Part shown: in pieces, positions 1 through 53,850 of the stretch
How positions within the stretch are numbered: the stretch's first letter is position 1
How the letters are laid out: each line of letters begins with the position of its first letter
Source: Octopus bimaculoides
Lineage: Eukaryota
Length of the DNA stretch: 64,000 bases
Direction of reading: 5' to 3'
NCBI RefSeq assembly: GCF_001194135.2
Contig: NC_068983.1
Location: forward strand, 44,638,963 to 44,702,962
Translations under genes and position numbers: made by a program
The notes under the pieces: generated by a model
Seen by the model: only the letters and a program-made list of their open reading frames with translations
What the model was told of the DNA's origin: nothing
Databases searched by the model: none

Positions 1-128
1 CATGAGTGCCAGTCAGGTGGCACTGTCATTGGCCACAACTACGATTTCACTTAACTCAACAGGTCATCTGCTGAGTCAAGTGAAACCGTAGTTTTGGCCA
101 ATGCCAGTGCTATGACTATTATTATTAT

Positions 129-190
<62 letters not shown>

Positions 191-1039
191 TATGTGTGTG
201 TGTGTGTGTGTGTGTCTTTGTGTCTGTTTGTCCAGCCACCCTCATTTGACAACCTATGTTGGTGTGGTTATGTCCCTGTACCTAGCAGTTTGGCAAAAGA
301 GACCAACAGAATTAATACCAAGCTTACAAAGAAGTCCTGGAGTCAATTTCTTCAACTAAAAAAAAACCTCTAAGGCGGTACTCCAGCATGGCCACAGTCA
401 AATGACTGAAACAAGCAAAAGAAAAAAAAGAGTATATAAATGCATAATTTGAAAGATTGAATAGAAATAAAATACAAACCATATTATAATTTTTTGACAA
501 ATTTGTGCCATCATTATGAAACGTTTGGCAAAGGGAAGTTTTTCCAACTGCTGAACTACCTATAAAATGGAAATGATAATAATTACTTCTACTGTAGGCA
601 CAAGGTCTTGAAAATTTTTGTAGGGAAGTGGGGCTAGTTGATTACTTCAACCCCAGTGTGTAACTGGTACTTATTTCATCAACCCTGGAAGGTTGAAAGG
701 CAAAGTTGATCTTGGCAGAATTTGAACTCAAAATGTAGCAGCTGATGAAATACTGCTAAGCATTTCGCCCAGTGTGCTAATGATTCTTATTTCTTTATTG
801 CCCACAAGGGGCTAAACATAGAGGGGACAAACAAGGACAGACAAAGGTATTAAGTCGATTACATCGTCCCCAGTGCGCAACTTGTACTTAATTTATTGAC
901 CCCGAAAGGATGAAAGGCAAAGTTGATCTCGGCGGAATTTGAACTCAGAACGTAACGGCAGATGAAATACCGCTAAGCATTTCGCCCGGCATGCTAACAA
1001 GTCTGCCAGCTCACCACCTTAACAGAAACAATAATAATG

Positions 1040-1318
1040 AGGATGATCACTAATTACCATTGTGGTGATAGTGATATTAATGCTGTTAATAATGATGAAC
1101 ATGATCATGATGATGATGATGGAAGTGGCGATGATGATGGAGGTGGTAGTGGTGATGATTATGGCGGTGGTGGTAGTAATGATGATGACGATGATGATAT
1201 GTCGATATGACGATGGTGGTAGTAACGACAGCAAGGGTGATGATAAAGATGGTGGTGATACTAACGATGGTGATGATGACAGTGGTGGCAGTAATGGTGA
1301 TGATGGTAGTGGTGGTCA

Positions 1319-1357
<39 letters not shown>

Positions 1358-1442
1358 TGGTGGTGATGGAAACAAATTTAAATATTTAATATTCAGGCAA
1401 GAAAGCAAAAACAACAAAGACGATCACTTTAACAGACGTTAA

Positions 1443-1474
<32 letters not shown>

Positions 1475-1505
1475 AATGATGATGATAATGATGATGATGA
1501 TGATA
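1040..1505. repeat. (GAT/GGT)n low-complexity tract
   Basis: Direct inspection. Confidence 0.95.
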
Positions 1506-2339
1506 TATAGGGGTTGTAGTGTTGCACTGACGATCACTTGATTCATCATCATCATCATCGTATAACGTCCACTTTCCATGCTAGTATGGGTTGGACGATT
1601 TGACTGAGGACTGGCGAACCAGACTCCAATAAAACCAGTTTACGTATTTCTTTTGCATTCTCTTTTTTATAATTGTCATTTTGTAACTATACCTTTTCTG
1701 TTTTAAAACCCATAAAAAATTATTTTGAAGTGGTTGGGGGGAGGGGTGCTGGAACAGATTAAATTATATTTTAGTTAATTGCAATGGGGAAAATTGATTT
1801 GTAAAATGAGTAAATCATAAGACAAGTTCAGTCATGGAACAAATTAAACTTATACTGCGAGGTATCACTGTCATCATATTCATCATCATCGTCGTCGTTT
1901 AACGTCCACTTTCCATGCTAGCATGGGTTGGACGATTTGACTGAGGACTGGTGAAACCGGATGGCAACACCAGGCTCCAATCTGATTTGGCAGAGTTTCT
2001 ACAGCTGGATGCCCTTCCTAACACCAACTACTACTCTGAGAGTGTAGTGGGTGCTTTTACGTGCCACTGGCAAGAAGGCCAATTGGGCGGGTACTGGCGA
2101 TGACCACGCTCAAAATGGTGTATCTTACGTGCCACCTGCACAGGAGCCAGTCCAGCGGCACTGGCAACGATCTCGCTCGAATGTCTTTTCATGTGCCACT
2201 GGCACAAGTGCCAGGAAGGCGACGTTGGTAATATCATCTGTTTATTTAATACCCAGTGTGAAAGTAATTGGTAAAATTGATTGAAATGAATCAATAACAC
2301 TATACTTTGATTAATATATGCACCTACTGTTTGAAAGCC

Positions 2340-2690
2340 TGAAACACGACTCTCTATTTAACAGTGAACTGGCAGAGGGTAAGTACACACAAAGTGAACA
2401 GAAAAAGCACTTCAAGGATACACTCAAAGCTTCACTGAAGAGTTTTGAGATCAAACCCTCCTCCACCCCAAAACCTGGGAAACACAAGCACAAGCCAGCC
2501 CTTACTGGCAAAGCTGCACCAACAGAGGTGCCACCTCCTACAAGCAGAATGGGATTGCAGGGGTGCAAAGAAAACGCGAAGTGTGCATGTCTAGAGTCAA
2601 CTCCTTGTCGTCAGTTTCAACAAACCACCAGTGCCCGACTTGTATCAGAGCCTTCCAAATACACATTGGACTGGTTAACCATAGCCAGAC
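2340..2690 (+). mobile_element. RTE-clade LINE 3' coding fragment
   Basis: LFNSELAEGKYTQSEQKKHFKDTLKASLKSFEI matches the RTE post-RT motif (LYGEL..GKR..GGQKKRFKDTLKASLK); degenerate C-terminal RAFQIHIGLVNH. Confidence 0.85.
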
Positions 2691-2714
2691 ATGGCGTGCC
2701 CTGCCTTCTTCTCC

Positions 2715-2925
2715 CATGTGATGTCATTGGTCGTCTTCAACAATGACAAATGAATTTGAGGACAGCTGCTTAAAGAAGTGCTGATCTCTAATTGTGGAGG
2801 GAACCAGTAGAAGATGTGAGAAGTGGTGAGAAAGAATCTTCAGACACTGGGTCTCACTAAGGAGATGACAAGGGACTGGAACTTGTGGCAATTTGCTGCA
2901 TTTGAGAAGACATGTCAAGCTAAGT
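2715..2925 (+). mobile_element. Second degraded RTE 3' fragment
   Basis: Same subfamily as 47895-48117 and 51586-51745 (...GEVVRKNLQTLGLTKEMTRDWNLWQFAAFEKT). Confidence 0.7.
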
Positions 2926-3085
2926 AAAATCATGGCCATCCATATATACAAGCATGTCCCTTTTTAGCCATGACCCTGCTCCCTCTCCTAGCTGAGAGGT
3001 CTTTGTCTTGCAGGTGCTAGTGCCACATAAGATGCACCTGTGCCGGTGACATTTAAAGAACACCCAGTGTGAAACCAATAGGTAT

Positions 3086-3704
3086 CATCATTATCATCAT
3101 CATCATCGTTTAACGTCCGTTTTCCATGCTAGCATGGGTTGGACGATTTGACTGAGGACTGGTGAACCAGATGGCTACACCAGGCTCCAATCTGATTTGG
3201 CAGAGCTTCTACAGCTGGATGCCCTTCCTAATGCCAAGCACTCCAAGAGTGTAGTGGGTGCTTTTACATGCCACCGGCACGAAGGCCAGTCAGCTGGTAC
3301 TGGCAATGGCCACGCTCAAAATGGTGTATTTTACGTGACACCTGCACAGGAGCCAGTCCAGCGGCACTGGCAACGATCTCACTCAAATGTCTTTACACGT
3401 GCCAGGAAGGTGACGCTGGGCACAGGTGCCATCCCGATTTCACTTTCCCTTGCCCCAACAGGTCTTCGCAAGCCGAGTTTAGTGTCCAGTGAAGGAGACG
3501 AAGTTGGCATGGGAGCCAGTCGTCGAATTTAGTTCGATTTTGATTTCACTTGCTTCAACAGGTCTTCACAAGCGGAGTTTAGTGTCCGATGAAGGAAGGT
3601 ACACATAAGTGGGCTGGCTACATCCCTGGCAGAGGCCTTGGATTTAGGTCTCACTTGGCTTGCCGGGTCTTCTCACGCACAGCATATTTCCAAAGGTCTC
3701 TGTC
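3086..3704 (-). mobile_element. SINE family D (GGAAGGGCATCCAGCTGTAGAAA core resembling the Meta domain; RTE-like tail ending in (GAT)n); representative long copy
   Basis: 6-bp TSD AGGTAT at 3080-3085 and 3705-3710. Related copies at about 1880-2220, 15905-16104, 22480-22795, 44340-44575, 55145-55586 and 59715-60070. Confidence 0.8.
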
Positions 3705-4905
3705 AGGTATGATTGACAGAAATTAATCTATAACACTATACTTTGATTAATATACGCACCTACTGTTCGAGTGCCCGACACGCTGGTGACATGTAAAGAG
3801 CACTCAGCACACTCTGTAAAGTGGTTAGTGTTCCGAAGAGCATCCAGCAGTAGATCCCTTGCCGAAACAGACAACTGGAGCCTGGACAGCTTGCCAGCTC
3901 CTGTGAAACTGTCTAACTCAGTGATTCCCAAACTTTTTGGGGCTGCCGCCCTCTTGACACCCAGGCTACATTCCTAGTTCCCCCACTCCAAGTAACCATA
4001 AAAAACGTAGACCTCTTTCTGAAGCAAATTCAAAGCAACTGGATTTCACCAATAAAACAACCTAATAAACCCATTATTTTGTTTTTTAACATGAATCATT
4101 ACCCCCACATTTTACATAAATTGCTACCCCATTATCGCCCCCTTGGAACTTTCCACTGCCCCCAGAGGGGCAATACCGCCCACTTTGAGAACCACTGGTC
4201 TAACCCATGCCAACGTGGAAAACGGACGTTAAATGGTGATGATGATTCTAGTGACAAATATATGAGTGCGTATTTTTTGAAAAGAATATAAGTTTATCAC
4301 AAGTGAAAAAATGGTTGAGGAGCACTGATATAGATAGAAAAGTAGATAGACACAAACACAGTTAATCTATTAATACAGACATCTAACGAGGAGATGTGTA
4401 TCTGCTAGAAATAACAGTCAAAAATTCGCTCAGATCACACTCTACCGCTGTTGAAAAGGATACATCGGATAATGTATCTTTTAATGAATATTTGTTATTA
4501 CCAGCGAATATTAACTACTATTCCACCCCAACCCACCAGTGGCGATAGGTCTACAAGGAAGCTTGTCCCTTTAGAAATAATAGCTATATATCCTTTTAAC
4601 CACATCATATCACCATAGAAGTAAAGAAAATGTTCGATAATGGCATTCTAGAGAGATAGTCACACTACATTTATAAAGATAAAGGGATGGTAGCAGCTTG
4701 AATGTTTTCGATCTTAGGTATGGTTTATCAGACGTGATACTACAAACCTAGGGTTAAACAGTAATAATGTCAGAGCACAAACACACATGTACATACAGGC
4801 GTACAAATGCACACATACATACCAGCTCGCACGTTCATGCATTACGATGCATGTGCCTGTACTTAGATGCTTTTGACATACACAAAATATAAACAACTAA
4901 CTCAC

Positions 4906-4942
4906 CAAGAAGAAAGCATTTAGCGTGGAGAACCGTCGTCAT
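4906..4942 (-). CDS. Candidate first exon (MTTVLHAKCFLL...) of a minus-strand gene; could be 5' UTR
   Basis: accATG start at 4942, strong donor CTTG|GTGAGT at 4906/4905, X-box-like GTTGCTAAGGAATA at 4944-4957. No homology recognised. Confidence 0.3.
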
Positions 4943-5653
4943 GGTTGCTAAGGAATAAAACGGATGTAATCAACAGATTCTAATAACGCAGTTAATCAGT
5001 TTTAGCATGCATGAAATTTCTTGTTTATATATCTGTGAAATAATATCGTCTCCTCCGGGATACCCAATATTTATTAAAGAATCAAATAATTAAGATTTAA
5101 AATATTTTTTATCAACAAATGCTACATTTTCTTTTTATTTTAAACTACTTAAATTTCATACAGTGTCGATACACACGAGTGAACAATAGATAAATCAATT
5201 CACCAAAATTTCTTCAACCACTTGAAGTTTTTCAAATTTTCATCATATTACATTTTAAAAAAATGTAGTTCTCATGCTGATGATGAAAATTGCATTCACA
5301 TTTTCTGGGCTTATGCAGTTTCGCACCTCTCCTTGAAAAATGCATTAAAAAAAAAATTTTTAGATATCGGAGATTACGAATATGCAAAAAAAGTAATTTT
5401 TTAATTTCACCCCCACCTCTTCCCCACCACAATTTAAATTTTGGTTTTGTTTACATAGAACGTGCTGATGTGTATACAAATTGCTGTCAATTACACGAAG
5501 GGAAGAAACAGGGTTATTCGAGATTCCAATTACGTCCCTTGCATCGGAAAAGAAACCAAAAGAACGAAATAAAAAAACTTCTAAACTTTAGAAAAATAAA
5601 AGAAATACATTATTTACATTTGACGGATATTTGTCCTCATCTTGTGTGTTGTT

Positions 5654-5699
5654 AACACAACGTTTCGGTTGATATACCCACCAGCCTTCATCAGGAGTC
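5654..5699 (-). ncRNA. Second (antisense) copy of the minimal hammerhead motif
   Basis: GACTC-CTGATGA-A-GGCTG(gtgggtatat)CAACC-GAAA-CGTT-GTGTT; one mismatch in each of stems I and II. Confidence 0.55.
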
Positions 5700-5765
5700 T
5701 TGGTGAAATTTCGAACTTGGGTTCTCATTCCTAAGGTTCGAAACCCAGGTTCGAAATTTTCCCAA

Positions 5766-5811
5766 GACACCTGATGAAAGCTGGAGGGTATATCACCCGA
5801 AACGTTGTGTT
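5766..5811 (+). ncRNA. Type I minimal hammerhead ribozyme motif, stem II mutated
   Basis: GACAC-CTGATGA-A-AGCTG(gagggtatat)CACCC-GAAA-CG-T-T-GTGTT. Stem I GACAC/GTGTT pairs; stem III is the palindrome ACGT. Confidence 0.55.
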
Positions 5812-7997
5812 AACAGCAAACAAGATGAAAATAAATATCCATCAAATGTAAATAATGTACATAATTCCTCATCTCTTAAATATTGAAATGAATAAAGGAG
5901 ATTTTACCCTTGACGTAAATCGTTATGGTTTCTTCTAATTTAATTTGAATGCTTTAAAAACAACGATTTTTATAATGTTTTTCCACTCAATAAACGTCAA
6001 ATTTATGAGGCCTGTCATTATTTTCGTCACACACACACACACAACGCACAAATTCCCATGTGTACGTGTACACAAGCCTATACATAAATGCATGCATGCA
6101 TGCATATTTGATTTATGCGATTGTAAATCATTAACTGTTAAATAAGAAATGTATGAATTCAGTTAAATATATATTTATATATATAACTGTGTTTGTGTGT
6201 GTTCTTTTATTTATAGATTTTTTTTACCAATGTAAAAAGAGCCAGTTGCTAACCTAGATCCAAGTGTCCTTCACTGAAATTTCAACATCAATGAGGTATT
6301 TGTACATGTTTGTATGTGTGCAAGAATTTGGAATCAATGCACACAAATACACACATGGATCTGTCTTGTTTTTTTGTAGCTATTCTTTTTCTTTTACTTG
6401 TTTCAGTCATTTGACTGCGGCCATGCTGGAGCACCGCCTTTAGTCGAGCAAATCGACCCCAGAGATTAATTCCGATTCTTTAATTCAAGATATTTGGAAT
6501 TGTGTAAATGTATGAATTTTAAACATACACACACACGCACACAGAAAATCTGCCTTTTATAGATTAGATAAGATATATATATATGCATGTATGTGTGTGT
6601 GTATATATTTGTGTGTCTGTGCTTGTTCCTCCAACATCACTTGACAACCGATGCTGGTGTATTCATGTCCCCGTAACTTAGCGGTTCGGCAATAAGAGAC
6701 TATTATCATCATCATCATCATCATCACTATTGTTATTTAAAAGGGTTTTTTTCTCTCAATTTATTGAATTTATATATTTTTAAAAATTTTTGTGGGAGGC
6801 AGTATTTTGGCCTGAAATGAAAATGTATTTGTTAATAATAATCTTTGAATGTACTTTTCATTCTGGAATTTTGTTTTCTTTCCTTTGTCTTGTTTTTTTT
6901 TGGGGGGGGGGATATTTTACTTTGTAAAGCAACAACAACTTAAACATTAACAAAAGTGACAAATTCTAAATCTGATGCAATCACTCTACCTAGAAAATTC
7001 AGGAGTAAATTAAATGTCATTCAACAACATATTAAAAAAGTGTATCATAATAGCAACACGTTTTTATATTTGAAACCAAAACAATCAATATCAATATTAT
7101 TATTAACATGTGTGTGTGCGTGTGTGTGTGTGTGTGTATTATAATACAGTTTGACTCAGATTCACGTGTCATAAAGTTTAGTGGGTAAAGTACATAATGT
7201 ATAACTTTAAATCAAAAACGTCATCAAATAATATATGTAACCCTTACAAAATGTACAGCATGCTACTATGTCTTGTTTGTCCTTTTACGTGTGTGTGTGT
7301 GTGTGCGTATGTGCATGTGTGCGTATGTGTGTGTGTGTGTAAAGCATAGTTATGTGGGATGAAGTTTGTTTTCTGGTTTTAGTTCCACTGTTATAGCAGC
7401 TTTGGGTGCTATAACAATAAGCTCTGGGACAATTAAAGCCTTGTGAGTAGATTTAGTAGATGGAAACTGAAAGAAGCCCATTGTATATANNNNNNNNNNN
7501 NNNNNNNNNNNNNNNNNNNNNNNNNNNNNNNNNNNNNNNNNNNNNNNNNNNNNNNNNNNNNNNNNNNNNNNNNNNNNNNNNNNNNNNNNNNNNNNNNNNN
7601 NNNNNNNNNNNNNNNNNNNNNNNNNNNNNNNNNNNNNNNNNNNNNNNNNNNNNNNNNNNNNNNNNNNNNNNNNNNNNNNNNNNNNNNNNNNNNNNNNNNN
7701 NNNNNNNNNNNNNNNNNNNNNNNNNNNNNNNNNNNNNNNNNNNNNNNNNNNNNNNNNNNNNNNNNNNNNNNNNNNNNNNNNNNNNNNNNNNNNNNNNNNN
7801 NNNNNNNNNNNNNNNNNNNNNNNNNNNNNNNNNNNNNNNNNNNNNNNNNNNNNNNNNNNNNNNNNNNNNNNNNNNNNNNNNNNNNNNNNNNNNNNNNNNN
7901 NNNNNNNNNNNNNNNNNNNNNNNNNNNNNNNNNNNNNNNNNGTGAGTGCGACACCCTAGCTGTTACCCATCACGCCCTCGGTATTGACAGTAGACGT

Positions 7998-8326
7998 TGT
8001 TGTTCTCGGCACTCCGTCGCAACAGCCTGCTCGTGAAATTAACGTGCAAGTGACTGAGCACTCCACAGACACGTGTACCCTTAACGTAGTTCTCGGGGAT
8101 ATTCAGCGTGACACAGTGTGACAAGACTGACCCTTTGAATTACAGGCACAGCAGAAACAGGAAGTAAGAGTGAGAGAAAGTTGTGGTGAAAGAGTACAGC
8201 CGGAGCCTTGTGAAACTGTAGGTGTTTTCGCTCAATAAACACTCACAATGCCCGGTCTGGGAAACGAAACCGCGATCCTATGACCGCGAGTCCGCTGCCC
8301 TAACCATTGGGCCATTGCGCCTCCAC
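7998..8326 (-). mobile_element. tRNA-headed SINE, family A (CAA tail), with a short internal deletion
   Basis: Head GTGGAGGCGCAATGGCCCA.TGGTTAGGGCAGCGG with A/B-box-like motifs; perfect 12-bp TSD GACAGTAGACGT at 7986-7997 and 8327-8338. Confidence 0.9.
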
Positions 8327-8349
8327 GACAGTAGACGTATATAAGAAAC

Positions 8350-8400
8350 GACACCGGTAGGAAGTGACGTAAATTGTCTCTCTCGAAGTAAACTTCCGCT
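8350..8400 (+). promoter_or_regulatory. Candidate promoter with ETS/CRE-type motifs
   Basis: GGAAGTGACGT at 8360-8370 (adjacent ETS core and CRE half-site) and ACTTCCGC at 8392-8399, in locally CpG-retaining sequence about 350 bp upstream of the 8741 ORF. Confidence 0.5.
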
Positions 8401-8649
8401 TTCATTGTTATGTTTCCACAAATTATCGGGAGACGTTAATTAATATTGTCAAAATAAATTGAAAATATATATATAAATACTAATAACAATAAGATGGAAA
8501 GGATAAAAGTTCAAAAACTTATTCAATCTCATTTGACTGAAAAGGATTTACATGTATAAGCTTTACCGAGCAGTTTTTTCTGAACGGAATCTTAAACGCT
8601 ATTTGAAAGATTGTGTCTTAAAAGTTTTGCTCATTTTAGGATCATTTTA

Positions 8650-8746
8650 TTTACCAGCTGAATTTAGGATTATTTACCACCTGAATTTAGGATAATTGCT
8701 TTACCACCTGAATTTAGGATCATTAATTTACTACCTGAATATGGAT
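8650..8746 (+). repeat. Four copies of a 20-21 bp unit TTTACCACCTGAATTTAGGAT; the last overlaps the ORF start codon
   Basis: Copies at 8650-8670, 8673-8693, 8700-8720 and a degenerate one at 8727-8746 (TTTACTACCTGAATATGGAT). Confidence 0.9.
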
Positions 8747-9001
8747 CAGCTACTTGTGACAGAACAAATGCGAGAAGCGCAGTCAAAGTTTGAAAAAGCT
8801 TGTCATCAAATTGTATTGCTTGATCAGAAGATACGGGACTTGGAGGTGCGTTATAAAAGAGCTGTAAAAAATAAGAAAAATTCTTTTCGGTATAATCTAA
8901 GATTACGTTTGTCTGTTGTAACGGGTGTAAAGATGATGTATCACCATTATGCCAGTACCAAAGCTGAGGAATTGGACTTACTCCGGCGCCAGATAGTCTG
9001 A
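8741..9001 (+). CDS. Intronless 86-aa basic, helical protein of unknown function (MDQLLVTEQMREAQSKFEKACHQIVLLDQKIRDLEVRYKRAVKNKKNSFRYNLRLRLSVVTGVKMMYHHYASTKAEELDLLRRQIV)
   Basis: Non-repetitive open frame with strong start context (gaatATGg), TGA at 8999-9001 and AATAAA about 40 nt downstream. Coiled-coil-like periodicity in the N-terminal half. Promoter-like motifs at 8360-8399. Confidence 0.7.
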   Translation: MDQLLVTEQMREAQSKFEKACHQIVLLDQKIRDLEVRYKRAVKNKKNSFRYNLRLRLSVVTGVKMMYHHYASTKAEELDLLRRQIV

Positions 9002-9918
9002 GACTCGACGACAAACAAACAACCACGGGAATCTTAAGTTGAATAAATTGATTTATCTATCCATAATGACGAACTTCTAAAAATTTGTGAGGAAGTGAAA
9101 AAAAAAGCTAAGAAGAAATGTTTTAGAATGAAAAAAAAAAAAGATATAATATTTAAAAAAATTTTTTAAATGAAAAGAGAAAAAATTAAATTATAAATAT
9201 TTCATAGGAATTATAATTTTTTTTCGCTTGTTTTAATACCAAATGCTGCTATGATGAAAAAAGGAGGACCCCCCCCCCCAAAAAAAAAATAATAATTATC
9301 CCACCACACCTTCACACTCCTCATCTGGCAGCTGTTCTTTGTTCTTCCAACTAAACAGTGACCATGGCGATAATTCATAATAAAATGCCTTTCTGTTCTA
9401 CTCCATTCAAGAATACATACATACACACACACACACATATATATATATTCTGGAACATCTATCTATGCATGAACACCAATTTCTCACCCGGCTGATAAGT
9501 TTGTAGTTTACAAATATACAACTGTCTTGTGTCTAAGAGAAAGCCATACTCGCAACATGTTCTTCAACTCAAAATGTATATGTATATATATACAAAAGCT
9601 CTGAAAAAAAAATTAATGCTCCCCTGTCATATTTTTTCCAACAACCCAACTGGATCCTTCAACACAAATCATACTGATTCTCTTAGAACCCATAAATACA
9701 TGCAATTTCGTTGTCATGACATTGTGTACTAAATCACTCTCCCCTCTGGCGAAGAACGATGTGCTTCGGACACGCATACATTTGTCGCCGTGTCATCTGT
9801 TCGATCTCAGAGACATTATCTTACATGGTCACCTATTCGTTCTTTCGATTGTCCGTATTACATTAAATGTTTTTCGATTAGTAATGACTGCCAACTAAGA
9901 TCATTATGTTTTTGTTTC

Positions 9919-9949
<31 letters not shown>

Positions 9950-10046
9950 CAAAAATAGTAGTGCTATTGTCAATTTCCATTTTAAGCGTTAAATCTTTTG
10001 ATTTCATTTTTTTCGTTTTTCTGCATTCATAATACACGAGTCCCTT

Positions 10047-10174
10047 ATATTTTATTTTGGCCGCGACGGTCTGTTCCTCCTCTGAGTTTCGCCTGTGGGA
10101 ATACAGGGAAGACCCTGTGCATCCACAGAAAAACCTCATAGTAGCAAGGGTCTGACTCGGCCAAAATAAAATAT
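10047..10174. other. 128-nt multi-stem hairpin
   Basis: Perfect 17-bp outer stem ATATTTTATTTTGGCCG/CGGCCAAAATAAAATAT; inner stems TGAGTTTC/AAAACCTCA, CTGTGG/CCACAG and ACAGGG/CCCTGT with a 4-nt loop. Confidence 0.85.
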
Positions 10175-12138
10175 TTTATTAATTTCTATGATATTCCGAC
10201 AGTCAACACTAAATGTGTGACACACAGACACACACTGATATGTATGTAAAATTGTTCACATGAAATCGAAATTTCGGGAATATTCTGTGGGGAGGCAAGA
10301 AGTTGTGAGATTTATGCCTTTCCTCATCTCCATTTATGAATCTATAGCATATCCTAATTTTTAGTTCGATTAGAATTTATTGTCTCACGTTGAATAACAT
10401 TTTTACAGTTTAGTTTCATCCCTGTACATCTGATTTCAAATCCCACTAGAGATGACTTTGTATTTAAGCCTTGCGTGGGGTTTATAAATAGTAGCAATTA
10501 TGAACTGAAATCTAGATGCTTAAAGCTGTCCCTCAGATATTAAACCTTGTATCTGATGAAAATAATTTGATCGTATCGATCTCAGTATTTAGTTTATGCT
10601 TACTCTTTCTCCTCTATATAACAGCTTATCGAACAACCAACCCCTAAACTTCTATGCTTGTTTCATACAGATATATAGCAATATTTTATGGAATGCGATG
10701 CTGTATGATGATCAAACATTTTCATTTTAATGTATAGAATCATACATAAATATGCTCCAAACTTTTTTTTATTTTACTTTGCATCAAAATTACCAATATT
10801 GGGTTCTAACTCCAGTGAGGGTGGATTATAGACCCAACCGTTTGTCATTTTGTTACAAGGATAAATATTTGAAGCTTATTTTATATTATCAACATCAAAT
10901 ATCAACTCATTCAGGGCTGAGATATCTGGAGTGTTGGACCAAAGCTGAAAGACATCATTTAGTTAGCATTTTAGCTGTATCAAATGTCCATGTATTTGTT
11001 GTGCATCCTCTGTTCAGCTCTTTTCAAGCATTTCAGCTATCACCATTCCATCGTTTTTTTTTTCTCTTCCTCCTCCAGACATGCTGTATCAAGGAATACG
11101 TCTTTCAATATGTCCTTTCATTTTTCTTTTTTTTTTATGAGTGGTTTGGTTTGACATAGATTTGGTTTCTAATCTACACAAGTTAACTCATTATTTTAGG
11201 TAGAGCTCACTATGTTCCTATTATGGGCTTGCTGTGATAAATAAGATTTTGTCTCTATTCTAAAACTAAAATGTTTGATGAGGTGCATAAGATTGATTGC
11301 AGAATAGAACAGGTTGTGTAACACGTTCTCTTGGTGGCTCATATTTCTTACATAGTTATTTTAATTTTAATACTGTCTCTGGAGTCATCAAATTACCAAT
11401 ATCATCAGTGTGGGCTTTTGGGTTTGCTTATTTCACATTTTTGGTTATAACTTCTGCTAATCCCTACTCTACAACCTTTTTAGTTATATTTAAGTGTGAG
11501 AGTAAAACACATGTATCAGACAATGAAGACATTCCATGCAAGAGAAGTGTCATTTTTATTTTCATGTTTTTTTTACCACACTTTGGATGGTTCCAGAAGC
11601 ATAGCAGTTTCTCTTTGAGGAGGGGTTACTTGCCCCTTGCTCAGTCCATCTGCATTCCTGGAGAGAGCAAAGCTGAGACAATTGGGTGCAGCTTTTTGGA
11701 TGCTGACGATTTGGTGTGGCTGACTGGATGTTCAACCTGTTTTGGTGATGGCATTCTTTTGGTGCTGGAGGCAAACACTCACATTTCTACATGTGCAGAA
11801 ATATATAAATAGAAAGAGTGAGCAGAGAGCGTTGATTCAGTGACACCAAAATGGATGTGTTGAAATGTCTCATACCCAGCTGAAGTGGTCTTGCACAATC
11901 CTTCTTTTGGTGCAACCTAGCCAATTCATGAACGAGTAGAATGAAATAAGTACTAGATTGGTAATTTTTTTATTGATTCCAGTGGGACAAAAAATAGCAA
12001 AGTTGGCATCAATGGGATTTGAACACAGAGCATAGAGATCTGGAATGAATACCTCAATAGAACTATAAATTAGAAATTTGCAGGAATAATTGTTCAGAGA
12101 TGTTGATGTTCATGTCTTTGAAATGTGTTTCATGTTAA

Positions 12139-12356
12139 CCCATTAAAGCCCATGGTCCTTTCTTTAGGACCAGAAAGATAATCCATCATATTTCTGCAAC
12201 ACCTGTATTTTTCTAAGGTATCTTCAATTAGTCATCAAGACCAGAGTGTCTTTCAAACATTGTAAAATAATTTTTTTATATATTTAGTATCAGATAAATT
12301 TGTATAAAAATAGATTTTTGGTAATAAACTAAATAAAAAATTTGGGCACTAATAGG
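12139..12356. mobile_element. piggyBac-type MITE
   Basis: TTAA|CCCATTAAAGCCCA...TGGGCACTAATAGG|TTAA. Confidence 0.7.
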
Positions 12357-13493
12357 TTAATTGAGCTTGTAGAATGAAATTTTAATATCTTAAGAAGTTC
12401 TAATATTCCAGTTATTATTTCTTGTAGAAAGGCACAAATACCCCCAATGTCTTATTTCCCTCCTTCCTTGTAAACAAGTGGTCAAATGTGTTCCACCTAC
12501 AGCAACTCTGACATTGTCCAATATTTTATTTTCCATTTTTTAAGCTTGCACAATGTGTTTTGAAGGAAAATTATTTGGCTGCTAGAAATAGCAGTTGAAG
12601 CAACCATGTAAGGACCTCTCTTATTGGCTCATTCTAGTCTAGTTCATCCCAGTGAAGAACTTTTTTAGTATATCTTCTTGGACAAGACCCTTTACTCCAC
12701 TTGCCGACAACTTAGTGCCTGATTATAAAATTTTTCTGTGTTATATTCAGTGGCAAGGGCAATATATGCAACTCTTAGCAATTTCATTCAGTAAGTTAGA
12801 CAAAAGAAAAATGAATGTAAAATTTTGATATCTTTACTTAATTGCACTATAGCCTCAGGCTGACTAAAGCCTTGTGAGTGGATTTGGTGGACAGAAACTG
12901 AAAGAAGGCTGTCATATATATGTATATATATATATGTTTATGTGTCTGTGTTTGTCCCCTCAACATCGCTTGACAACTGATGCTGGTGTGTTTACGTCCC
13001 CGTAACTTAGCAGTTCGGCAAAAGAGACCGATAGAATAAGTACTAGGCTTACAAAGAATAAGTCCTGGGGTCGATTTGCTTGACTAAAGGCGGTGCTCTA
13101 GCATGGCCGCAGTCAAATAACTGAAACAAGTAAAAGAGTATTATTATTAAGGCGATGAGTTGGACAAAATGCTTAGTGGCTTTCCTTCCAGTTCTTTACA
13201 TTCTGAGTTCAAATCCTGCTGAGGTCAACCATACCTTTCATCCCTTTGGGGTTGATAGAATAAGTATCAGTCAAGCACTGGGGTTGATGTAATTGACTAG
13301 CCCCCTCCTCCAAAATTTCAGGTCTTTGTAGCTATGGTAAAAATGATTATTATTATTGTTAGTGGGGCAAAATGCAGTGAGCCGGGTGAATTGTTAGCAC
13401 ACCAAACAAAATGCTAAGCAGCATTTGATCTCCCTTTACATTCTGAGTTCAAATTCCTCCAAAGATGACTTTGCCTTTCATCCTTACAGAGTC

Positions 13494-13853
13494 AATAAAT
13501 TAAGTACCAGTTGCATACTGGGTCGATTTAATCGACTGGCCCCCTCCCCAAAAATTTTGAGCCTTGTGTCTAGAGTAGAAAAGAATAAATTAAGTACCAG
13601 TTGCATGCTGGGGTTTGATCTAATGGACTGCCCCACTCCCCCAAAATTTCGGGCCTTGTGCCTAGAGTAGAAAAGAATAAATTAAGTACCAGTTGCATGC
13701 TGGGGTCGATCTAATCAACTGGCCCCCTCTCCAAAAATTTCAGGCCTTGTGCCTAGAGTAGAAAAGAATAAATTAAGTACCAGTCAAGCACTGGGGTCAA
13801 TGTAATCAACTAGCCCCCTACTCCCCAAATTTCAGGCCTTGTTCCTATAGTAA
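13494..13853 (+). repeat. Four head-to-tail copies of a 90-92 bp SINE-C tail unit
   Basis: TAAGTACCAG recurs at 13501, 13591, 13683 and 13774; units end GCCTTGTGCCTAGAGTAGAAAAG. Confidence 0.9.
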
Positions 13854-14684
13854 AGATTATTATTATTATTCAGGGATAAATTGATTGAATATTGGAGCGT
13901 TTAGCAAAATGCCTTGTGGTATTTCATTATGGCCCTTTAAGTTCTGAGTGCAGTCCTACCAAGGTTAACTTTGCATTTCACTCTTCTGAGCACTAATCAA
14001 GTATTGGAGTTGATATATGATTGGTCTCAACCTAAATTTTTGACCTCTTGCTTATGTAAGAAATTATTATTGTAAAGCGCAGTGAACTAGCAGAATTATT
14101 GAAGTGTCAGTCAAAATGCTTTGCAGTATTTCTTCTGACACATTATGCTCTGAGTTCAAATTCCGCAGAGGTCATCTTTACATTTCATCCCTCCAGGATC
14201 AATAAATTCTGTGTCTGAAATGCCTTTTAAATTTTATTTTCCATAAATAAGACAAATTATTATGCATATATTTTATAATGTTATTGTTTTGTTTTTAATT
14301 TGTTTTGCATTTATACCTTTTGTATTTTAAGAATTTTTCTTGTAATAATGAGAAAGTTAGCCAAAAATATTAATATTTGTTTGAAACTGTCAAAAACCAT
14401 ATCTTCGTTTTGTTTTGATGTCATTATTATGAAATTAACACAATTTCTTTGAGTGAAAAAAATTGATTTTCTGTTCTTTTTCTTTTCTAGAATTGATAAA
14501 ATAAGTACCAGCTATGTATTAGGGGTTGTTTTATTATAATTATATAAAGTGATGGATATGGTAGAATTCCTGACAAAAATGTCTTGAAATATTACTTAGA
14601 TTACATTTTTTTGCAGTTTGAATTCAGTTGTGTTTGATTTTGCCTTTAATTCTTTCAAAATTGCTAAAATGAAATACTAGTTTC

Positions 14685-14986
14685 CAGGGCTGTGGAATCG
14701 AAACAAAAAAACTTTGACTCTGATTCCGACTCCTGTACTTATTGGCACCTCCGACTCTCAACTCCTCTTTATGTAATTAAGTGATTATGGTCTACATATC
14801 TCACAAAGCATATGCATACGCTTGTACTTTGAATATGTCTATATGTTATAACTGGTTTATATTAAAGAATAAAGATATTGTGAGTCGAAATCAAAGTCGG
14901 TATAGTTTTACCGACTCCAACTCTGACTACCCCTTAATTGTTTCCGAATCCAACTCCAACTCCATGACTCCGACTCGACAGCCCTG
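14685..14986. mobile_element. hAT-type MITE
   Basis: TIR CAGGGCTGT...ACAGCCCTG; perfect 8-bp TSD CTAGTTTC (14677-14684, 14987-14994); internal (CCGACT)-like repeats. Confidence 0.9.
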
Positions 14987-16748
14987 CTAGTTTCTAGTTT
15001 CAGTTTCCATCACAAACTTAGAGCCAACCTAATTGGATCCCACTCCACAACAACTGTCATGCAATGAGGTTTATATCTAAATCCACTGCAGCAAACAACA
15101 ATTATATATTCACAGATTACATTGCAGATAGCTCAACTTGGGATTGATTTAATTCAACTGTAACCCTTCTCTTTAAAATCTGTGGCTTTGTGCATGTTAT
15201 TATTTTCAAGAGTAAGGCAGCTGAGCTGGCAGAATTGTTAGCATGCCAGGAAAAATGCTTAGCAGCATTTCATCTGTCTTTATGTTCTGTGTTCAAATTC
15301 CTCCAAGATTGACTCCATTCTTGGAGGAATTTCAGGGTTGATAAAATACTTTCAGGGTCAATAAATAAGTACTAGCTGGACACTGGGATCAATATAATTG
15401 GCTTACGCTTCTCCCGAAATTGCTAGCCTGGTGCTAAAATTTAAAACCATTATTATTTTTAAGGGCAGAAGATTGGCAGAATTGCTCAAATGTTCAAAAG
15501 TATTCCAGCCATGCCAATTCCATCAATTCCTTACGTGCATGGAACCTAGGACTACATTATTCAATGAGTCTTTTTCTAAGATGGTGAGTTTATCATTTGA
15601 GGGAAAGTTGATTGCTATTTCTGGCAGGCTGAATGAATACTTACAAATACCTTCAATAGTTTTTATTGTTCAGGTGTGCAATTTTTTCTGCAAATATTTT
15701 TTTGTGTTCCTCTGCAGAAATCTTTATTCTGCACCTGCCTCCCTAGAATGTTAGCTACCATTGCAAGTTCTTGTGTGGTGTCTTCCTACTAGTTCCCATT
15801 AGTACCTTGCTAATGTGGACTCAGTCATGTCGTTGCCTTGGAAATTTGTAATGATATAGGAGATAGTCAACTGCTTTTGAAAATTGGTTGGTCAGTGTTT
15901 AAGCGCTTGACTGGCCTTCATGCCGGTGGCACGTAAAAGCACCCACTACACTCTTGGAGTGGTTGGCGTTAGGAAGGGCATCCAGCTGTAGAAACTCTGC
16001 CAGATCAGATTGGAGTCTGGTGTAGCCATCCGGTTTCACCAGTCCTCAGTCAAATCGTCCAACCCATGCTAGCATGGAAAGCGGATGTTAAACGATGATG
16101 ATGAAGAATTTTTGCTTTGGTTATTGAAATCAATTAAATACTGCTATCTAATTTAGTCATAACTGTCTATTATTTGTATTTATAGTATTATGCAAAATCT
16201 TAAAGAAAAGAAAATTATTTTGTTAGATCTGAAGCAATCAATGACTTAGATGAGTTCTGATCTTCTAAGTGGAGAAAGGAATGCTTTCGTTTGAATTTTG
16301 TTAACATTGCTTTGAAACCAAATGGTTTCAGATTCATTCCCACTGCACAACACCTTAGGCAAGTGTCTTCCACTACAGTCATGGCTGTGTGGTATTCCCA
16401 ACCACATGGTTCCAGGGTCAGTCCTACGGCATGGTACCTTGGGCAAGTGTCTTCTACTATAGTCTCAGGCCAACCAAAGCCTTTGTGAGTGGATTTGGTA
16501 GACGGAAACTGTGTAGAAGCCCATTGTGTATATATATGTGCGTGTTTGCGTGTATTCCCATCACCCTTGACAACCATTGTTTGATTACGTTCCCATAACT
16601 TAATTCAGCAAGAGAGACTGATAGAGTAAGTACCAGACTTACAAAAAAAAAAAAAAGAACTGGTGTCATTTTGTTCAACCAGACCCCCCAAGATCATGCC
16701 CCATCATAGTCACAGTCCATTGAAATGAGTTAAAGATATGAATCTCTA

Positions 16749-17105
16749 CAGGGTGATCCAAAAGCTTGTCAGCCCCCTACTGAAAAGTAATAAGAGCAGT
16801 AGAGCAACAATATAATATCAAACACATGTAACTGGTTTTAATATATTCACATTCATTGACACTGACACTGTCATACATCGAGAAGGTCTGTACAAACACC
16901 ATCATTTTCGTGGCACAAAATGATGTGGCTCCGTGTCCTGTGTGATAATTTATGAAGCTGTGCTTTGGTGATTGTTGCAAAGGCTGCCGAAACAGCATCC
17001 TTTAACTGTTGGGTATTCTGGTATTGCTCTTGTGAAACTCTCTCCCTGATAATAGAAAATTAAAACAATATTTACAGGTGGTTACAAGACTTTCGGACCA
17101 CCCTG
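16749..17105. mobile_element. Tc1/mariner-type MITE
   Basis: TA|CAGGGTGATCCAAAAG...CTTTCGGACCACCCTG|TA. Confidence 0.85.
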
Positions 17106-17449
17106 TAGATTCCTCAGGCTCAAGTTTTTATTTTGGTGCCATATCATACCAGAATTCTAAAACGGAATGTGTTAAATATTATAACATGGTAAATGTCAAT
17201 AGGATTTCTTTAAACTGTTATGTTTAAAACCCTTTTAAATGCTAATCTTCCTGAAACTGTTGTTAGTTTCTAGACTTCAAAATCTTCCATTTTAGAGTGT
17301 TCATATTTAAATTAAAACTTTCTATTCTAATTTTATATAAAGAACTTTTTTTTATCAGTTATGTGCTAAACATTAGCTTAATAATGGAAAAGAAAAGTGT
17401 ATTACTTCTCGAAATTCTTCCAAATCCTTGATCCCCCTACCCATTCCAT

Positions 17450-17655
17450 CCATTTTGCTACTCACTCTTTCTGGAAGGGTCATGGGGGTAAAGTCTTCAG
17501 ACACATCTTCATTAAACTTTCCTACTGGATTCTCAAGCATGGTTAACTGAGATCATGGACATTATTGCACCATCTTCCTCTTTGTCTACCCCCAAGTTTC
17601 TTGCCAGTTGGCTCAGCTTGAAGAATCTTTCTTGCAATCTTTTCCTATGGTATTG
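17450..17655 (-). mobile_element. RTE 3' fragment with stop codons
   Basis: IP*EKIARKILQAEPTGKKLGGRQRGRWCNNVHDLS* resembles the RTE 'GKRPRGRPRTRW' region. Confidence 0.75.
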
Positions 17656-18737
17656 TAATCATGCCTGTTGTGCCAGAGCAGTAACCTTTCAATGCAAAGA
17701 AGTAGTGGATAATCTTCAAGAGACTCCCTGATCTTTGAGCTCTACACCCTATCAAGTAACATTACCCAGGGGATCCTTCAGAAGAACTCTATTTTGGCCC
17801 CTTGCATTTATGTTTGTCCTCTTTTGATCATTACCTAACATTCATAATCTTCTTCCGTGAAGATAGGCACAAAATCTGCCTTTTTACCAACTTCTTTCCT
17901 TGATTATTCTTATAATCGAAACAGTGTATTTTATTATAAATATCACAAAAGGATTAAGTAATAGATTGTTTTCTAAATTCACAAGTAATATAGAAATAGT
18001 TTAGAAATGTATTAGCGGCTAACACACACATTAACCATCATAGTAACAGAGAAAAGCAAAAAGCTCCAGCTGTAAACAAGGTTATCTCTTAATTCTCTTA
18101 AGTTCTACTTGTAGTACTATTAAATTACTTAATTATCTTTAATTACTGCATTTGATGGCATAAATGATGCACAAGCATATTAGATGCATCTCAATATCTG
18201 TTGAGCATATTCAAGTCAAAAAGTTTTTAGTACATTAAAGCATGTAATTATAGGACCCAGGATGAAATCTTGAGCTATTTTTGGGAAAAAAGAAAGTGCA
18301 TCTTATATGTCATGCCATCAAATATTATATTTCTTTTTTAGTATTAAATCATTAGATTTTTATTACAAAGCATACATTTATTTCACATTTTTCACACAGT
18401 TTCTAAGCATATATCAGTTAAGAGGATCTACACTTTATATTTGATAATTTTTTTCTTCATAATCTGAATATAAAGAAAACAAAACACTTCCATGAAATTA
18501 AATTGTATTTAAAGAGAAGCTAGAGAGGAATTAGTAGATGATTATGATGAAGATAATGATGGTAAGGACAATGATCATTTTTACCATCTTCATTATCATA
18601 TTTATCTATTGAGCAGTTTGTGTCAGCTTGTTGCTCCTGAACCAGTAAAGTTGCTTTATGTTTATGTATGTTATTGTTCCTTTTATAACCTAACAGATTT
18701 TTCATGAAATCTGTGGTTAAGTGTTGTCATAAGTTAC

Positions 18738-36537: not shown

Positions 36538-36575
<38 letters not shown>

Positions 36576-53791: not shown

Positions 53792-53850
<59 letters not shown>

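What the first reader, a model, noticed from the sequence alone, without database searches (positions are those of the whole stretch)
8350..9050. Self-contained intronless micro-gene encoding an 86-aa basic coiled-coil-like protein, possibly a domesticated mobile-element or viral ORF
Seen in sequence: promoter motifs, strong Kozak context, an uninterrupted ORF and AATAAA, within otherwise decayed repeat DNA. From memory, the pattern 'A..KF.KAC.QIVLL..KI.DL..RY.RA......SFRY.LRLRL....GV..MY..YA..KA.EL' resembles unnamed small proteins in other mollusc and cnidarian genomes that I associate with Maverick/Polinton/adintovirus-like loci; this recall is unverified. No polB, integrase, capsid gene or long TIR is visible nearby. 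If the link holds, this would be a lone retained gene, i.e. a candidate domestication.
Basis: partly seen in the sequence, partly recalled or inferred. Interest (0 to 1): 0.8.

Follow-up and report, generated by a model that had tools for sequence, protein, structure and literature searches.

The report
Conserved small helical-hairpin host gene
The 86-codon reading frame is a real, very strongly conserved animal gene for a small two-helix protein of unknown function, inherited vertically in molluscs and other invertebrates, and nothing links it to a virus or mobile element.

Summary
The ORF is real: window 8741-9001 (+), 86 aa, pI 9.9, with A at -3 and G at +4, and AATAAA at 9044-9049. ORF length alone is not significant, but homology and selection are decisive. 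Annotated gastropod and bivalve proteins are 77-85% identical (E 1e-33 to 1e-37), and 19 residues are invariant across 30 homologues. A sister-species contig shows 9 synonymous and 0 non-synonymous changes. AlphaFold2 gives a confident two-helix hairpin (pLDDT 93.7). The family has no Pfam, PDB or literature match. It comprises 950 clusters, with named members in molluscs, an annelid, a nemertean, a priapulid and spiders. Every member whose genomic locus I checked has a single-exon CDS. The mobile-element reading is not supported. The homologue loci inspected carry ordinary host genes or nothing identifiable, and two IMG/VR scans and a viral fold search found nothing. The largest ORF in the 64-kb window is 193 aa. 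The flanking inverted repeats are dispersed repeat families. The gene tree follows the species tree. The 'TATA box' lies at the edge of a species-specific SINE insertion and is absent in the sister species. Best reading: an ancient host microprotein that works as a protein-binding hairpin; function untested.

The parts
8741..9001 (+). Complete single-exon CDS (86 codons plus TGA) of the conserved helical-hairpin microprotein
   Evidence: ORF. It is 77-85% identical to annotated gastropod and bivalve proteins. dN = 0 and dS = 0.19 against sister-species contig L001. Against the second cephalopod-like lineage (L011), 47 codons differ synonymously and 3 non-synonymously out of 79. The CDS is 96.6% identical with no indels, while the flanks are 70-92% identical with indels.
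8747..8869 (+). Helix 1 (residues 3-43); hydrophobic residues in a 3-4 heptad spacing (M10, A13, F17, A20, I24, L27, I31, L34, Y38, A41)
   Evidence: AlphaFold2 model, pLDDT 93.7. Conservation table.
8879..8995 (+). Helix 2 (residues 47-85), containing the most conserved stretch of the family, FRYNLRLRLSVVTGVKMMYHHYA (residues 49-71)
   Evidence: R50, Y51, L53, R54, G62, M66, Y70, A71 and A75 are at least 80% conserved across 138 representatives of the superfamily.
9044..9049 (+). AATAAA polyadenylation-signal motif, 43 nt after the stop codon
   Evidence: Read directly. Retained in sister-species contig L001 even though the surrounding 3' flank is only about 70% identical. Its use is not shown.
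8647..8740 (+). 27-bp tandem repeat (3.7 copies) ending at the start codon; it would lie in the 5' leader
   Evidence: Tandem Repeats Finder. L001 has one unit fewer. This stretch contains no upstream ATG.
8360..8398 (+). Candidate core-promoter block: GGAAGTGACGTAA (ETS-like plus CRE-like, 8360-8372) and an inverted ETS-like ACTTCCG (8392-8398)
   Evidence: Read directly. Retained in L001, but absent within 1.5 kb upstream of the gene in the squid-like, gastropod, bivalve and priapulid loci. Function is inferred, not shown.
8338..8345 (+).
   Evidence: Its first base is the last base of the SINE target-site duplication. The sister species has CATGTAAG here.
7998..8326 (-). Neighbour, not part of the gene: a tRNA-derived SINE inserted just upstream of the promoter block, flanked by a 12-bp target-site duplication (7986-7997 and 8327-8338)
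   Evidence: Empty site in L001. Two further full copies at about 88% identity and one partial copy elsewhere in the window.

Best explanation
This is an ancient, vertically inherited host gene. It is not a viral or transposon relic.

**What the gene is**
- A single exon encodes an 86-aa basic protein that folds into one antiparallel two-helix hairpin (helices 3-43 and 47-85).
- It belongs to the most conserved orthologue group ('KMMYHHYA' type) of a large, undescribed invertebrate family. A more divergent paralogue clade ('EGVRNMYYEYA' type) often carries acidic Ser/Asp/Glu-rich tails.

**Shown**
- Coding status, strong purifying selection, fold prediction, family breadth, single-exon CDS in every lineage examined, ordinary host neighbourhoods, and a gene tree congruent with the species tree.

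**Inferred mechanism (about 0.35 on its own)**
- The hairpin is an obligate protein-protein interaction module.
- In the orthologue group nearly every position from 13 to 77 is at least 90% conserved, on all faces of both helices. My reading is that helix 2 also carries a second hydrophobic stripe beyond the one facing helix 1.
- The hairpin therefore most likely pairs with a second hairpin or a partner's helices into a four-helix bundle.
- The Arg/Tyr/Lys-rich hairpin tip (R37, Y38, R40, K43, K45, K46, R50, Y51, R54) would contact an acidic ligand such as nucleic acid or an acidic protein segment, possibly in the nucleus.
For: **Homology**
- 63 relatives; 77-85% identity to annotated Batillaria, Elysia, Lymnaea, Biomphalaria, Nucella, Mytilus, Mizuhopecten, Pinctada, Sinanodonta and Mactra proteins, 72% to Dreissena.
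- 19 invariant and 26 nearly invariant columns among 30 sequences.

**Selection**
- 9 synonymous and 0 non-synonymous changes against the sister species, dS 0.19.
- 47 synonymous and 3 non-synonymous codon differences against a second cephalopod-like lineage.
- A Mytilus species pair shows 9 synonymous and 0 non-synonymous changes, with flanks only about 80% identical.
- The window CDS has no indels, while its flanks have many.

**Fold**
- AlphaFold2 pLDDT 93.7, pTM 0.77, two helices.

**Breadth**
- 950 clusters at 50% identity with E <= 1e-3, and 421 with E <= 1e-10.
- Named members come from molluscs, an annelid (Lamellibrachia), a nemertean (Tubulanus), Priapulus and spiders.

**Gene structure and context**
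- Contiguous single-exon CDS in Biomphalaria, Mytilus, Sinanodonta, Dreissena and Priapulus, with host-gene neighbours.

**Vertical descent**
- In the NJ tree the window sequence groups with the two cephalopod-like sequences. Heterobranch gastropods, caenogastropods, pteriomorph bivalves and the other bivalves each group together. All molluscs separate from the priapulid and annelid-like sequences and from the paralogue clade.

**Conservation map**
-.
Against: - No direct evidence of transcription or translation in the window's own species. The Logan contigs that carry the protein are colinear with the genome and may be genomic.
- Function is wholly inferred. The family has no Pfam family, no solved relative and no literature.
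- Fold matches are generic helical hairpins with E > 0.1.
- Oligomerisation and the basic-tip ligand are read from the conservation pattern only.
- The promoter is not established. The motifs are retained only in a close sister species whose neutral divergence is low.
- The paralogue clade shows copy-number expansion (tandem arrays) and one SWIM zinc-finger fusion. An element history for part of the superfamily is therefore not strictly excluded.
Confidence: 0.8

Rival explanations
1. One reading: a lone retained gene of a Maverick/Polinton/adintovirus-like element, that is, a domesticated viral or mobile-element ORF.
For: - The CDS is intronless and small, and it lies in repeat-rich DNA.
- The wider superfamily is large, with multi-copy paralogues, tandem arrays and one fusion to a SWIM zinc finger, a domain common in transposase-derived genes.
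Against: - No relative in IMG/VR in two scans with three peptide patterns.
- No viral fold match with E < 0.1.
- No polymerase, integrase, capsid or ATPase family in any neighbour of the homologue loci inspected.
- The largest ORF in the whole 64-kb window is 193 aa, and 20 tested window ORFs gave no match above a Pfam gathering threshold; the few weak hits were unrelated to element genes.
- The inverted repeats around the gene are dispersed repeat families with 16 to 19 blast matches each, not one pair of terminal repeats.
- A single orthologue locus per genome was found wherever looked up, and the tree is congruent with the species tree back to the mollusc-priapulid split.
- The tandem arrays contain only the gene itself plus non-coding spacer.
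Confidence: 0.03
2. A processed retrocopy (retrogene or pseudogene) of an intron-containing parent gene located elsewhere in the genome.
For: - The CDS is intronless.
- A-rich tracts follow the AATAAA at about 9100-9180.
- Active retroelements are nearby, as shown by the recent SINE insertion.
Against: - The CDS is a single exon in every lineage examined: gastropod, bivalves and priapulid. Intronlessness is therefore ancestral, not a recent retrocopy feature.
- Strong purifying selection (dN = 0) excludes a pseudogene.
- The locus is orthologous and colinear, flanks included, in the sister species.
- No second copy exists in the window.
Confidence: 0.04
3. A chance ORF in AT-rich non-coding DNA with fortuitous promoter-like and poly(A)-like motifs.
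For: - The window has 60 stop-to-stop ORFs of at least 90 codons.
- The TATA-like motif is not conserved.
- An overlapping antisense ORF of 118 aa exists.
Against: - E-values down to 1e-37 to annotated proteins of other molluscs.
- A 9:0 synonymous to non-synonymous ratio and no indels in the CDS.
- In tblastx the sense frame scores 81% identity against 47% for the best antisense frame.
Confidence: 0.01
4. The window gene is a host gene, but the divergent paralogue clade of the superfamily is, or was, carried by some repeat or mobile unit. The family as a whole would then have a mixed history.
For: - Tandem arrays of at least 7 near-identical copies, with periods of about 2.5 and 2.8 kb, in one assembly.
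- Clusters with 8 to 41 member sequences.
- A SWIM fusion in Ostrea.
Against: - The array units hold no other plausible gene.
- The paralogue loci in Dreissena and in the ERZ25072384 assembly show no element genes.
- Tandem gene amplification is an ordinary host process.
Confidence: 0.1

Closest known systems
Unnamed 'hypothetical protein' orthologues in molluscs (for example Biomphalaria glabrata BgiMline_020601, Lymnaea stagnalis unnamed product, Elysia EGW08_018747, Mytilus galloprovincialis, Mizuhopecten KP79_PYT04058)
   Same: They are 77-85% identical over the whole 86 aa. They share the Met-Asp start in several species, the same invariant core and a single-exon CDS.
   Different: The window protein is the shortest (86 aa) and lacks the 5-55-residue variable N- and C-terminal tails seen in bivalves. 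None of these proteins has a described function.
Divergent paralogue clade of the same superfamily (for example Lamellibrachia LSAT2_008627, Tubulanus LOC141898434, Littorina 'nucleolar transcription factor 1-B-like', Nucella ACOMHN_051719)
   Same: Same two-helix core and the same superfamily-conserved residues: F17, A20, C21, Q23, L27, R37, Y38, A41, R50, Y51, L53, R54, G62, M66, Y70, A71, A75.
   Different: They are 36-47% identical. Helix 2 reads EGVRNM(Y/F)YEYA instead of TGVKMMYHHYA. They carry long acidic Ser/Asp/Glu tails, are sometimes amplified in tandem arrays, and form a separate clade in the tree.
Generic antiparallel helical hairpins with solved structures (LSD1 tower, Rad50 zinc-hook coiled coil, Vipp1/PspA/ESCRT-III hairpin, sperm doublet-microtubule inner proteins)
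   Same: Overall shape: two helices of about 40 residues packed antiparallel; TM-score 0.8-0.9 normalised to the query.
   Different: Foldseek E-values are all above 0.3 and sequence identity is 11-19%, so there is no evidence of homology. This is a shape resemblance only.
BAP31 C-terminal coiled coil (vDED), PDB 4jzl and 8xwx
   Same: Weak profile match of helix 1 only (E 0.006-0.01, about 19 bits).
   Different: The match covers about 48 residues of a heptad-repeat region and omits the invariant helix 2. It is compatible with coiled-coil composition alone, so this is not membership.
Maverick/Polinton/adintovirus accessory ORFs
   Same: Only that both are small and intronless.
   Different: No sequence, fold or neighbourhood link was found (and the neighbourhood calls).

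Membership tests
Maverick/Polinton/adintovirus-derived gene | Homologues lie inside elements that encode protein-primed DNA polymerase B, rve integrase, capsid proteins, packaging ATPase or protease | tested here: not met
   Neighbours of homologues are PTPA, 7tm_1, Pyridoxal_deC, PhyH, ALS2CR8 and VWA, or have no match. No element family appears within 10-kb flanks of the loci inspected.
Maverick/Polinton/adintovirus-derived gene | Element genes or their remnants, and a pair of long terminal inverted repeats, near the window gene | tested here: not met
   The largest stop-to-stop ORF in 64 kb is 193 aa. Twenty ORFs gave no match above a Pfam gathering threshold, and none to an element gene family. 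The inverted repeats are dispersed repeat families with 16-19 blast matches each.
Maverick/Polinton/adintovirus-derived gene | Relatives present in viral sequence or structure collections | tested here: not met
   IMG/VR scans with patterns from alignments A3 and A1 found no relative. BFVD Foldseek gave no match with E < 0.1. These collections hold few animal Polinton-like viruses, so the test is not exhaustive.
Maverick/Polinton/adintovirus-derived gene | Patchy, multi-copy distribution discordant with host phylogeny | tested here: not met
   A single orthologue locus was found in each genome looked up, and the NJ tree is congruent with mollusc classes and subclasses.
Undescribed invertebrate helical-hairpin microprotein family (no Pfam accession); orthologue group with ...RYNLRL(R/K)LS..TG.KMMYHHYA | Signature motif and full-length alignment to the family profile | tested here: met
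   100% query coverage; 19 invariant columns shared. Family profile search: 950 clusters at E <= 1e-3.
Undescribed invertebrate helical-hairpin microprotein family (no Pfam accession); orthologue group with ...RYNLRL(R/K)LS..TG.KMMYHHYA | Two long helices joined by a short basic loop | tested here: met
   AlphaFold2 gives helices 3-43 and 47-85, pLDDT 93.7. This is a prediction, not a solved structure.
Undescribed invertebrate helical-hairpin microprotein family (no Pfam accession); orthologue group with ...RYNLRL(R/K)LS..TG.KMMYHHYA | Single-exon coding sequence | tested here: met
   The window CDS is uninterrupted. The CDS is also contiguous in Biomphalaria, Mytilus, Sinanodonta, Dreissena (paralogue) and Priapulus.
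Processed retrocopy or pseudogene | Intron-containing parent gene, relaxed selection or disablements, lineage-specific location | tested here: not met
   dN = 0 and no disablements. The locus is shared, flanks included, with the sister species. The intronless CDS is ancestral to the family. I could not search the whole genome of the species for a parent gene.
BAP31 vDED / BLOC-1 subunit 2 type coiled-coil proteins | Significant profile match over the conserved core | tested here: not met
   BAP31 matches helix 1 only, at E 0.006-0.01. BLOC1_2 matches 1 of 138 members at E 6.5e-4, and not the window protein.

The most novel reading that the evidence does not exclude
The gene may be the best-conserved representative of an undescribed family of intronless helical-hairpin microproteins.
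- The family is at least as old as the mollusc-priapulid-spider ancestor.
- Its 23-residue core has barely changed over that span.
- It was not seen among named hits from standard model animals.

Such constraint on every face of an 86-aa protein would point to an essential, still unidentified partner or complex. In that case a conserved piece of invertebrate cell biology has escaped description because the usual model organisms lack it.
Probability: 0.5. Interest if true: 0.45.

Novelty: new member of a known kind. Interest (0 to 1): 0.3.

Why it matters
For the scan, the main value is negative: this attractive 'domesticated viral gene' candidate is an ordinary, vertically inherited host gene.

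The gene also has some positive interest.
- It is a clean example of a very small, intronless, extremely constrained protein family with no Pfam entry, no structure and no literature.
- Genes like this are easily missed or left as 'hypothetical' in invertebrate genome annotation.
- Expression and structural data could give it a first functional description.

Tried and rejected
**Searches that found nothing useful**
- Pfam on the protein and on 138 family representatives: no family.
- PDB sequence and profile searches: only a weak BAP31 coiled-coil match to helix 1, rejected as compositional.
- Foldseek against PDB and BFVD: generic hairpins only, E > 0.1.
- Full-text search for five core peptide strings: no paper.
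- IMG/VR scans: nothing.
- Rfam and ARAGORN on the window: nothing; the SINE head is too diverged to be called a tRNA.

**Context and expression tests**
- Synteny by tblastx of five homologue loci against the window: only the micro-gene itself is shared.
- Conservation of promoter motifs beyond the sister species: none. I therefore do not endorse the TATA box or claim a proven promoter.
- SRA run accessions searched in the literature to learn whether the contigs are RNA or DNA: no information. The only hit identified the GHVU01 transcriptome as that of a gregarine, so that homologue is probably a transcript of its polychaete host (inference).
I replaced this with ORF-by-ORF scans.

**Not used or considered only**
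- The bacterial promoter and terminator scanner, because it is inappropriate for an animal gene.
- A possible 5'-UTR intron (GT at 8388, AG at 8639). It would remove the three upstream ATGs at 8411, 8495 and 8552. This is inference only, and L001 is unspliced or genomic across it.
Full report
**1. The observation**

The region holds an uninterrupted ORF from ATG 8741 to TGA 8999-9001, encoding 86 aa (MDQLLVTEQ...LLRRQIV). The product is basic: pI 9.9, with 18 Lys+Arg against 10 Asp+Glu. The start context is gaatATGG, with A at -3 and G at +4. AATAAA lies at 9044-9049.

ORF length proves nothing by itself, because the window has 60 stop-to-stop ORFs of at least 90 codons. The case rests on the evidence in section 2.

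**2. It is a real gene under strong constraint**

- *Homology.* A search of 5.8 billion proteins returned 63 relatives.
  - Annotated 'hypothetical' proteins of gastropods (Batillaria, Elysia, Lymnaea, Biomphalaria, Nucella, Arion) and bivalves (Mactra, Sinanodonta, Mizuhopecten, Pinctada, Mytilus) are 77-85% identical over the whole length, at E 1e-33 to 1e-37; the Dreissena protein is 72% identical at E 2e-30.
  - In an alignment of 30 sequences, 19 columns are invariant and 26 more nearly so. The most conserved stretch is FRYNLRLRLSVVTGVKMMYHHYA.
- *Sister species.* A 1.2-kb contig from a closely related species (L001) is colinear with window 8327-9442 and encodes the identical protein.
  - It carries 9 synonymous and 0 non-synonymous substitutions (dN 0, dS 0.19).
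  - The CDS is 96.6% identical with no indel. The flanks are 70-92% identical with many indels.
- *Second cephalopod-like lineage.* Against L010-L014, 47 codons differ synonymously and only 3 non-synonymously out of 79.
- *Mytilus.* Two Mytilus species give 9 synonymous and 0 non-synonymous changes, with flanks about 80% identical.
- *Start codon.* The Met-Asp start aligns with the annotated start in several gastropods and a bivalve. An 8-bp indel just upstream of the ATG separates the window from L001, so the upstream extension of the frame is non-coding.
- *Antisense ORF.* The overlapping antisense ORF (8670-9026) is a by-product. In tblastx the sense frame scores 81% identity and the best antisense frame 47%.

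**3. Fold**

AlphaFold2 run with the 30-sequence alignment gives a confident model: pLDDT 93.7, pTM 0.77. It is an antiparallel hairpin of two long helices, residues 3-43 and 47-85, joined by a short loop within the basic KNKKN segment.

Foldseek against the PDB and the viral BFVD library returned only generic helical hairpins, with no match below E = 0.1.

**4. The family**

- *Size.* A profile search of 1.84 billion representative proteins found 950 clusters at E <= 1e-3 and 421 at E <= 1e-10.
- *Taxa.* Named members come from molluscs, the annelid Lamellibrachia, the nemertean Tubulanus, Priapulus caudatus and spiders such as Stegodyphus, Oedothorax, Araneus and Trichonephila. All are 'hypothetical' or carry automatic names. 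No cnidarian, vertebrate or insect name appeared among the hits shown, but only the best 120-150 hits of each search were visible.
- *No description.* No member matches a Pfam family, apart from one SWIM fusion and two marginal hits. The profile has no solved relative beyond a weak coiled-coil match of helix 1 to BAP31. The core peptide strings occur in no paper of the library.
- *Two groups.* The window's orthologue group has helix 2 ending KMMYHHYA. A divergent paralogue clade has EGVRNM(Y/F)YEYA and usually a long acidic tail.
- *Superfamily-wide conserved positions:* F17, A20, C21, Q23, L27, R37, Y38, A41, R50, Y51, L53, R54, G62, M66, Y70, A71, A75.

**5. Test of the mobile-element or viral interpretation**

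- *Neighbourhoods of homologues*:
  - Biomphalaria: PTPA and a 7tm_1 receptor.
  - Mytilus: a pyridoxal-dependent decarboxylase.
  - Ostrea paralogue: PhyH and ALS2CR8.
  - Dreissena paralogue: a VWA-domain gene.
  - Sinanodonta, Priapulus, several metagenomic contigs and two unnamed assemblies: nothing recognisable.
  - Nowhere is there a polymerase, integrase, capsid, protease or packaging ATPase.
- *Gene structure.* In every genome assembly checked the CDS is one contiguous exon.
- *Viral collections.* Two IMG/VR scans with three peptide patterns found no relative.
- *The window itself.* The largest ORF is 193 aa, and 20 ORFs gave no match above a Pfam gathering threshold; the few weak hits were unrelated to element genes.
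- *Inverted repeats.* Those bracketing the gene at 12-18 kb belong to dispersed repeat families with 16-19 blast matches each across the window. They are not the termini of one element.
- *Phylogeny.* In a neighbour-joining tree the window sequence groups with the two cephalopod-like sequences. Heterobranch gastropods, caenogastropods, pteriomorph bivalves and the remaining bivalves each group together, and all molluscs are set apart from the priapulid and annelid-like sequences and from the paralogue clade. This is the pattern of vertical descent.

**6. Local anatomy**

- *SINE insertion.* A tRNA-derived SINE of about 329 bp lies on the minus strand at 7998-8326. It is flanked by a 12-bp target-site duplication (7986-7997 and 8327-8338). 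The sister species has the empty site. Two further full copies and one partial copy lie elsewhere in the window.
It is not a conserved promoter element.
- *Other promoter-like motifs.* Just downstream lie GGAAGTGACGTAA (8360-8372, ETS-like plus CRE-like) and an inverted ACTTCCG (8392-8398). Both are retained in the sister species, but neither is found upstream of the gene in more distant lineages. A promoter here is plausible but unproven.
- *Leader.* A 27-bp tandem repeat (8647-8740) abuts the start codon and differs by one unit between the two species.
- *Possible leader intron (inference only).* If transcription starts near 8370, the leader holds three upstream ATGs at 8411, 8495 and 8552. 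A GT at 8388 and a pyrimidine-rich AG at 8639, both retained in L001, could define a leader intron that removes all three.
- *Expression of relatives.* One relative sits in a transcriptome assembly of the gregarine Siedleckia nematoides (identified via PMC10304595) and is probably from its polychaete host. Another comes from a marine metatranscriptome catalogue. These attributions are my inference.

**7. How it most likely works**

Shown: a conserved, selected, single-exon gene for a predicted two-helix hairpin.

Inferred (about 0.35):
- Helix 1 has hydrophobic residues in a regular 3-4 heptad spacing: M10, A13, F17, A20, I24, L27, I31, L34, Y38, A41.
- My reading of helix 2 is that it carries two hydrophobic stripes.
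- In the orthologue group nearly every residue from 13 to 77 is at least 90% conserved, including residues that must face solvent in a lone hairpin. That is the signature of a protein buried in a larger assembly.
- The hairpin therefore most likely pairs with a second hairpin or with partner helices into a four-helix bundle.
- The hairpin tip concentrates Arg, Lys and Tyr (R37, Y38, R40, K43, K45, K46, R50, Y51, R54). The superfamily-invariant members of this cluster suggest contact with an acidic ligand such as nucleic acid or an acidic protein tail. The acidic tails of the paralogues would fit a chromatin or nuclear setting.

None of this has been tested.

**8. Comparison with what is known**

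The gene is a member of an uncharacterised invertebrate family that databases list only as hypothetical proteins. It resembles generic helical hairpins in shape only: the LSD1 tower, the Rad50 hook, Vipp1/ESCRT-III and microtubule inner proteins. It fails all four membership tests for a Maverick/Polinton-derived gene. It also fails those for a recent retrocopy or pseudogene.

**9. Verdict**

- The structural description is supported.
- The domestication hypothesis is not supported.

As a scan finding this is an ordinary host gene. Its residual interest is that such a constrained micro-protein family remains undescribed. Interest 0.3.

Noticed in passing
window 7998-8326 (-), duplications at 7986-7997 and 8327-8338: A species-specific insertion of a tRNA-derived SINE lies immediately upstream of the gene's candidate promoter, with a 12-bp target-site duplication. 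The sister-species contig L001 has the empty site. ARAGORN and Rfam do not call the tRNA-like head.
   Followed up: yes
window 24739-25069 (+), 45781-46110 (+), 54489-54622 (partial): Further copies of the same SINE family, about 88% identical to the copy next to the gene.
   Followed up: partly
L008 (ENA ERZ25071447 ctg79977) 78-17561; L009 (ctg87255) 1650-18641: A paralogue of the family (100-128 aa, acidic tail) is amplified in head-to-tail arrays of at least 7 near-identical copies, with periods of about 2.47 kb and 2.8 kb. The spacers hold only microsatellites and no other plausible gene. The organism is unknown.
   Followed up: partly
L015 (Ostrea edulis OX387705.1) 10001-12318: The predicted protein XP_048777949 joins an N-terminal SWIM zinc-finger region to a C-terminal copy of the hairpin domain, next to an ALS2CR8-domain gene. 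It could be a true fusion or a gene-model artefact.
   Followed up: partly
window 8647-8740: A 27-bp tandem repeat (3.7 units) ends exactly at the start codon. The sister species has one unit fewer.
   Followed up: partly
window 15900-16110 and 860-1015 (query copies): Two dispersed repeat families give 16 and 19 blast matches in the window, in both orientations. They account for the long-range inverted repeats around the gene.
   Followed up: yes
window 5606-5859: A near-perfect palindrome: two 118-nt arms, 89% complementary, separated by 18 nt.
   Followed up: no
window 32578-33024 (+): A 149-aa open frame rich in Ser, with an acidic patch. Its end reminded me of the start of a LysM domain (memory only). 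It has no Pfam or PDB match and may be an exon of a neighbouring host gene.
   Followed up: partly
window 7490-7942 and roughly 30430-30740, 36570-37060, 38330-39050, 40410-40730, 53300-53800, 58700-59530: Runs of N (assembly gaps) interrupt the window. One lies only about 800 bp upstream of the gene, so the upstream context is incomplete.
   Followed up: no
P0057 (EukProt GHVU01075074): A 67%-identical homologue sits in the transcriptome assembly of the gregarine Siedleckia nematoides. Given the family's animal distribution, it is probably a transcript of the polychaete host, that is, contamination.
   Followed up: partly
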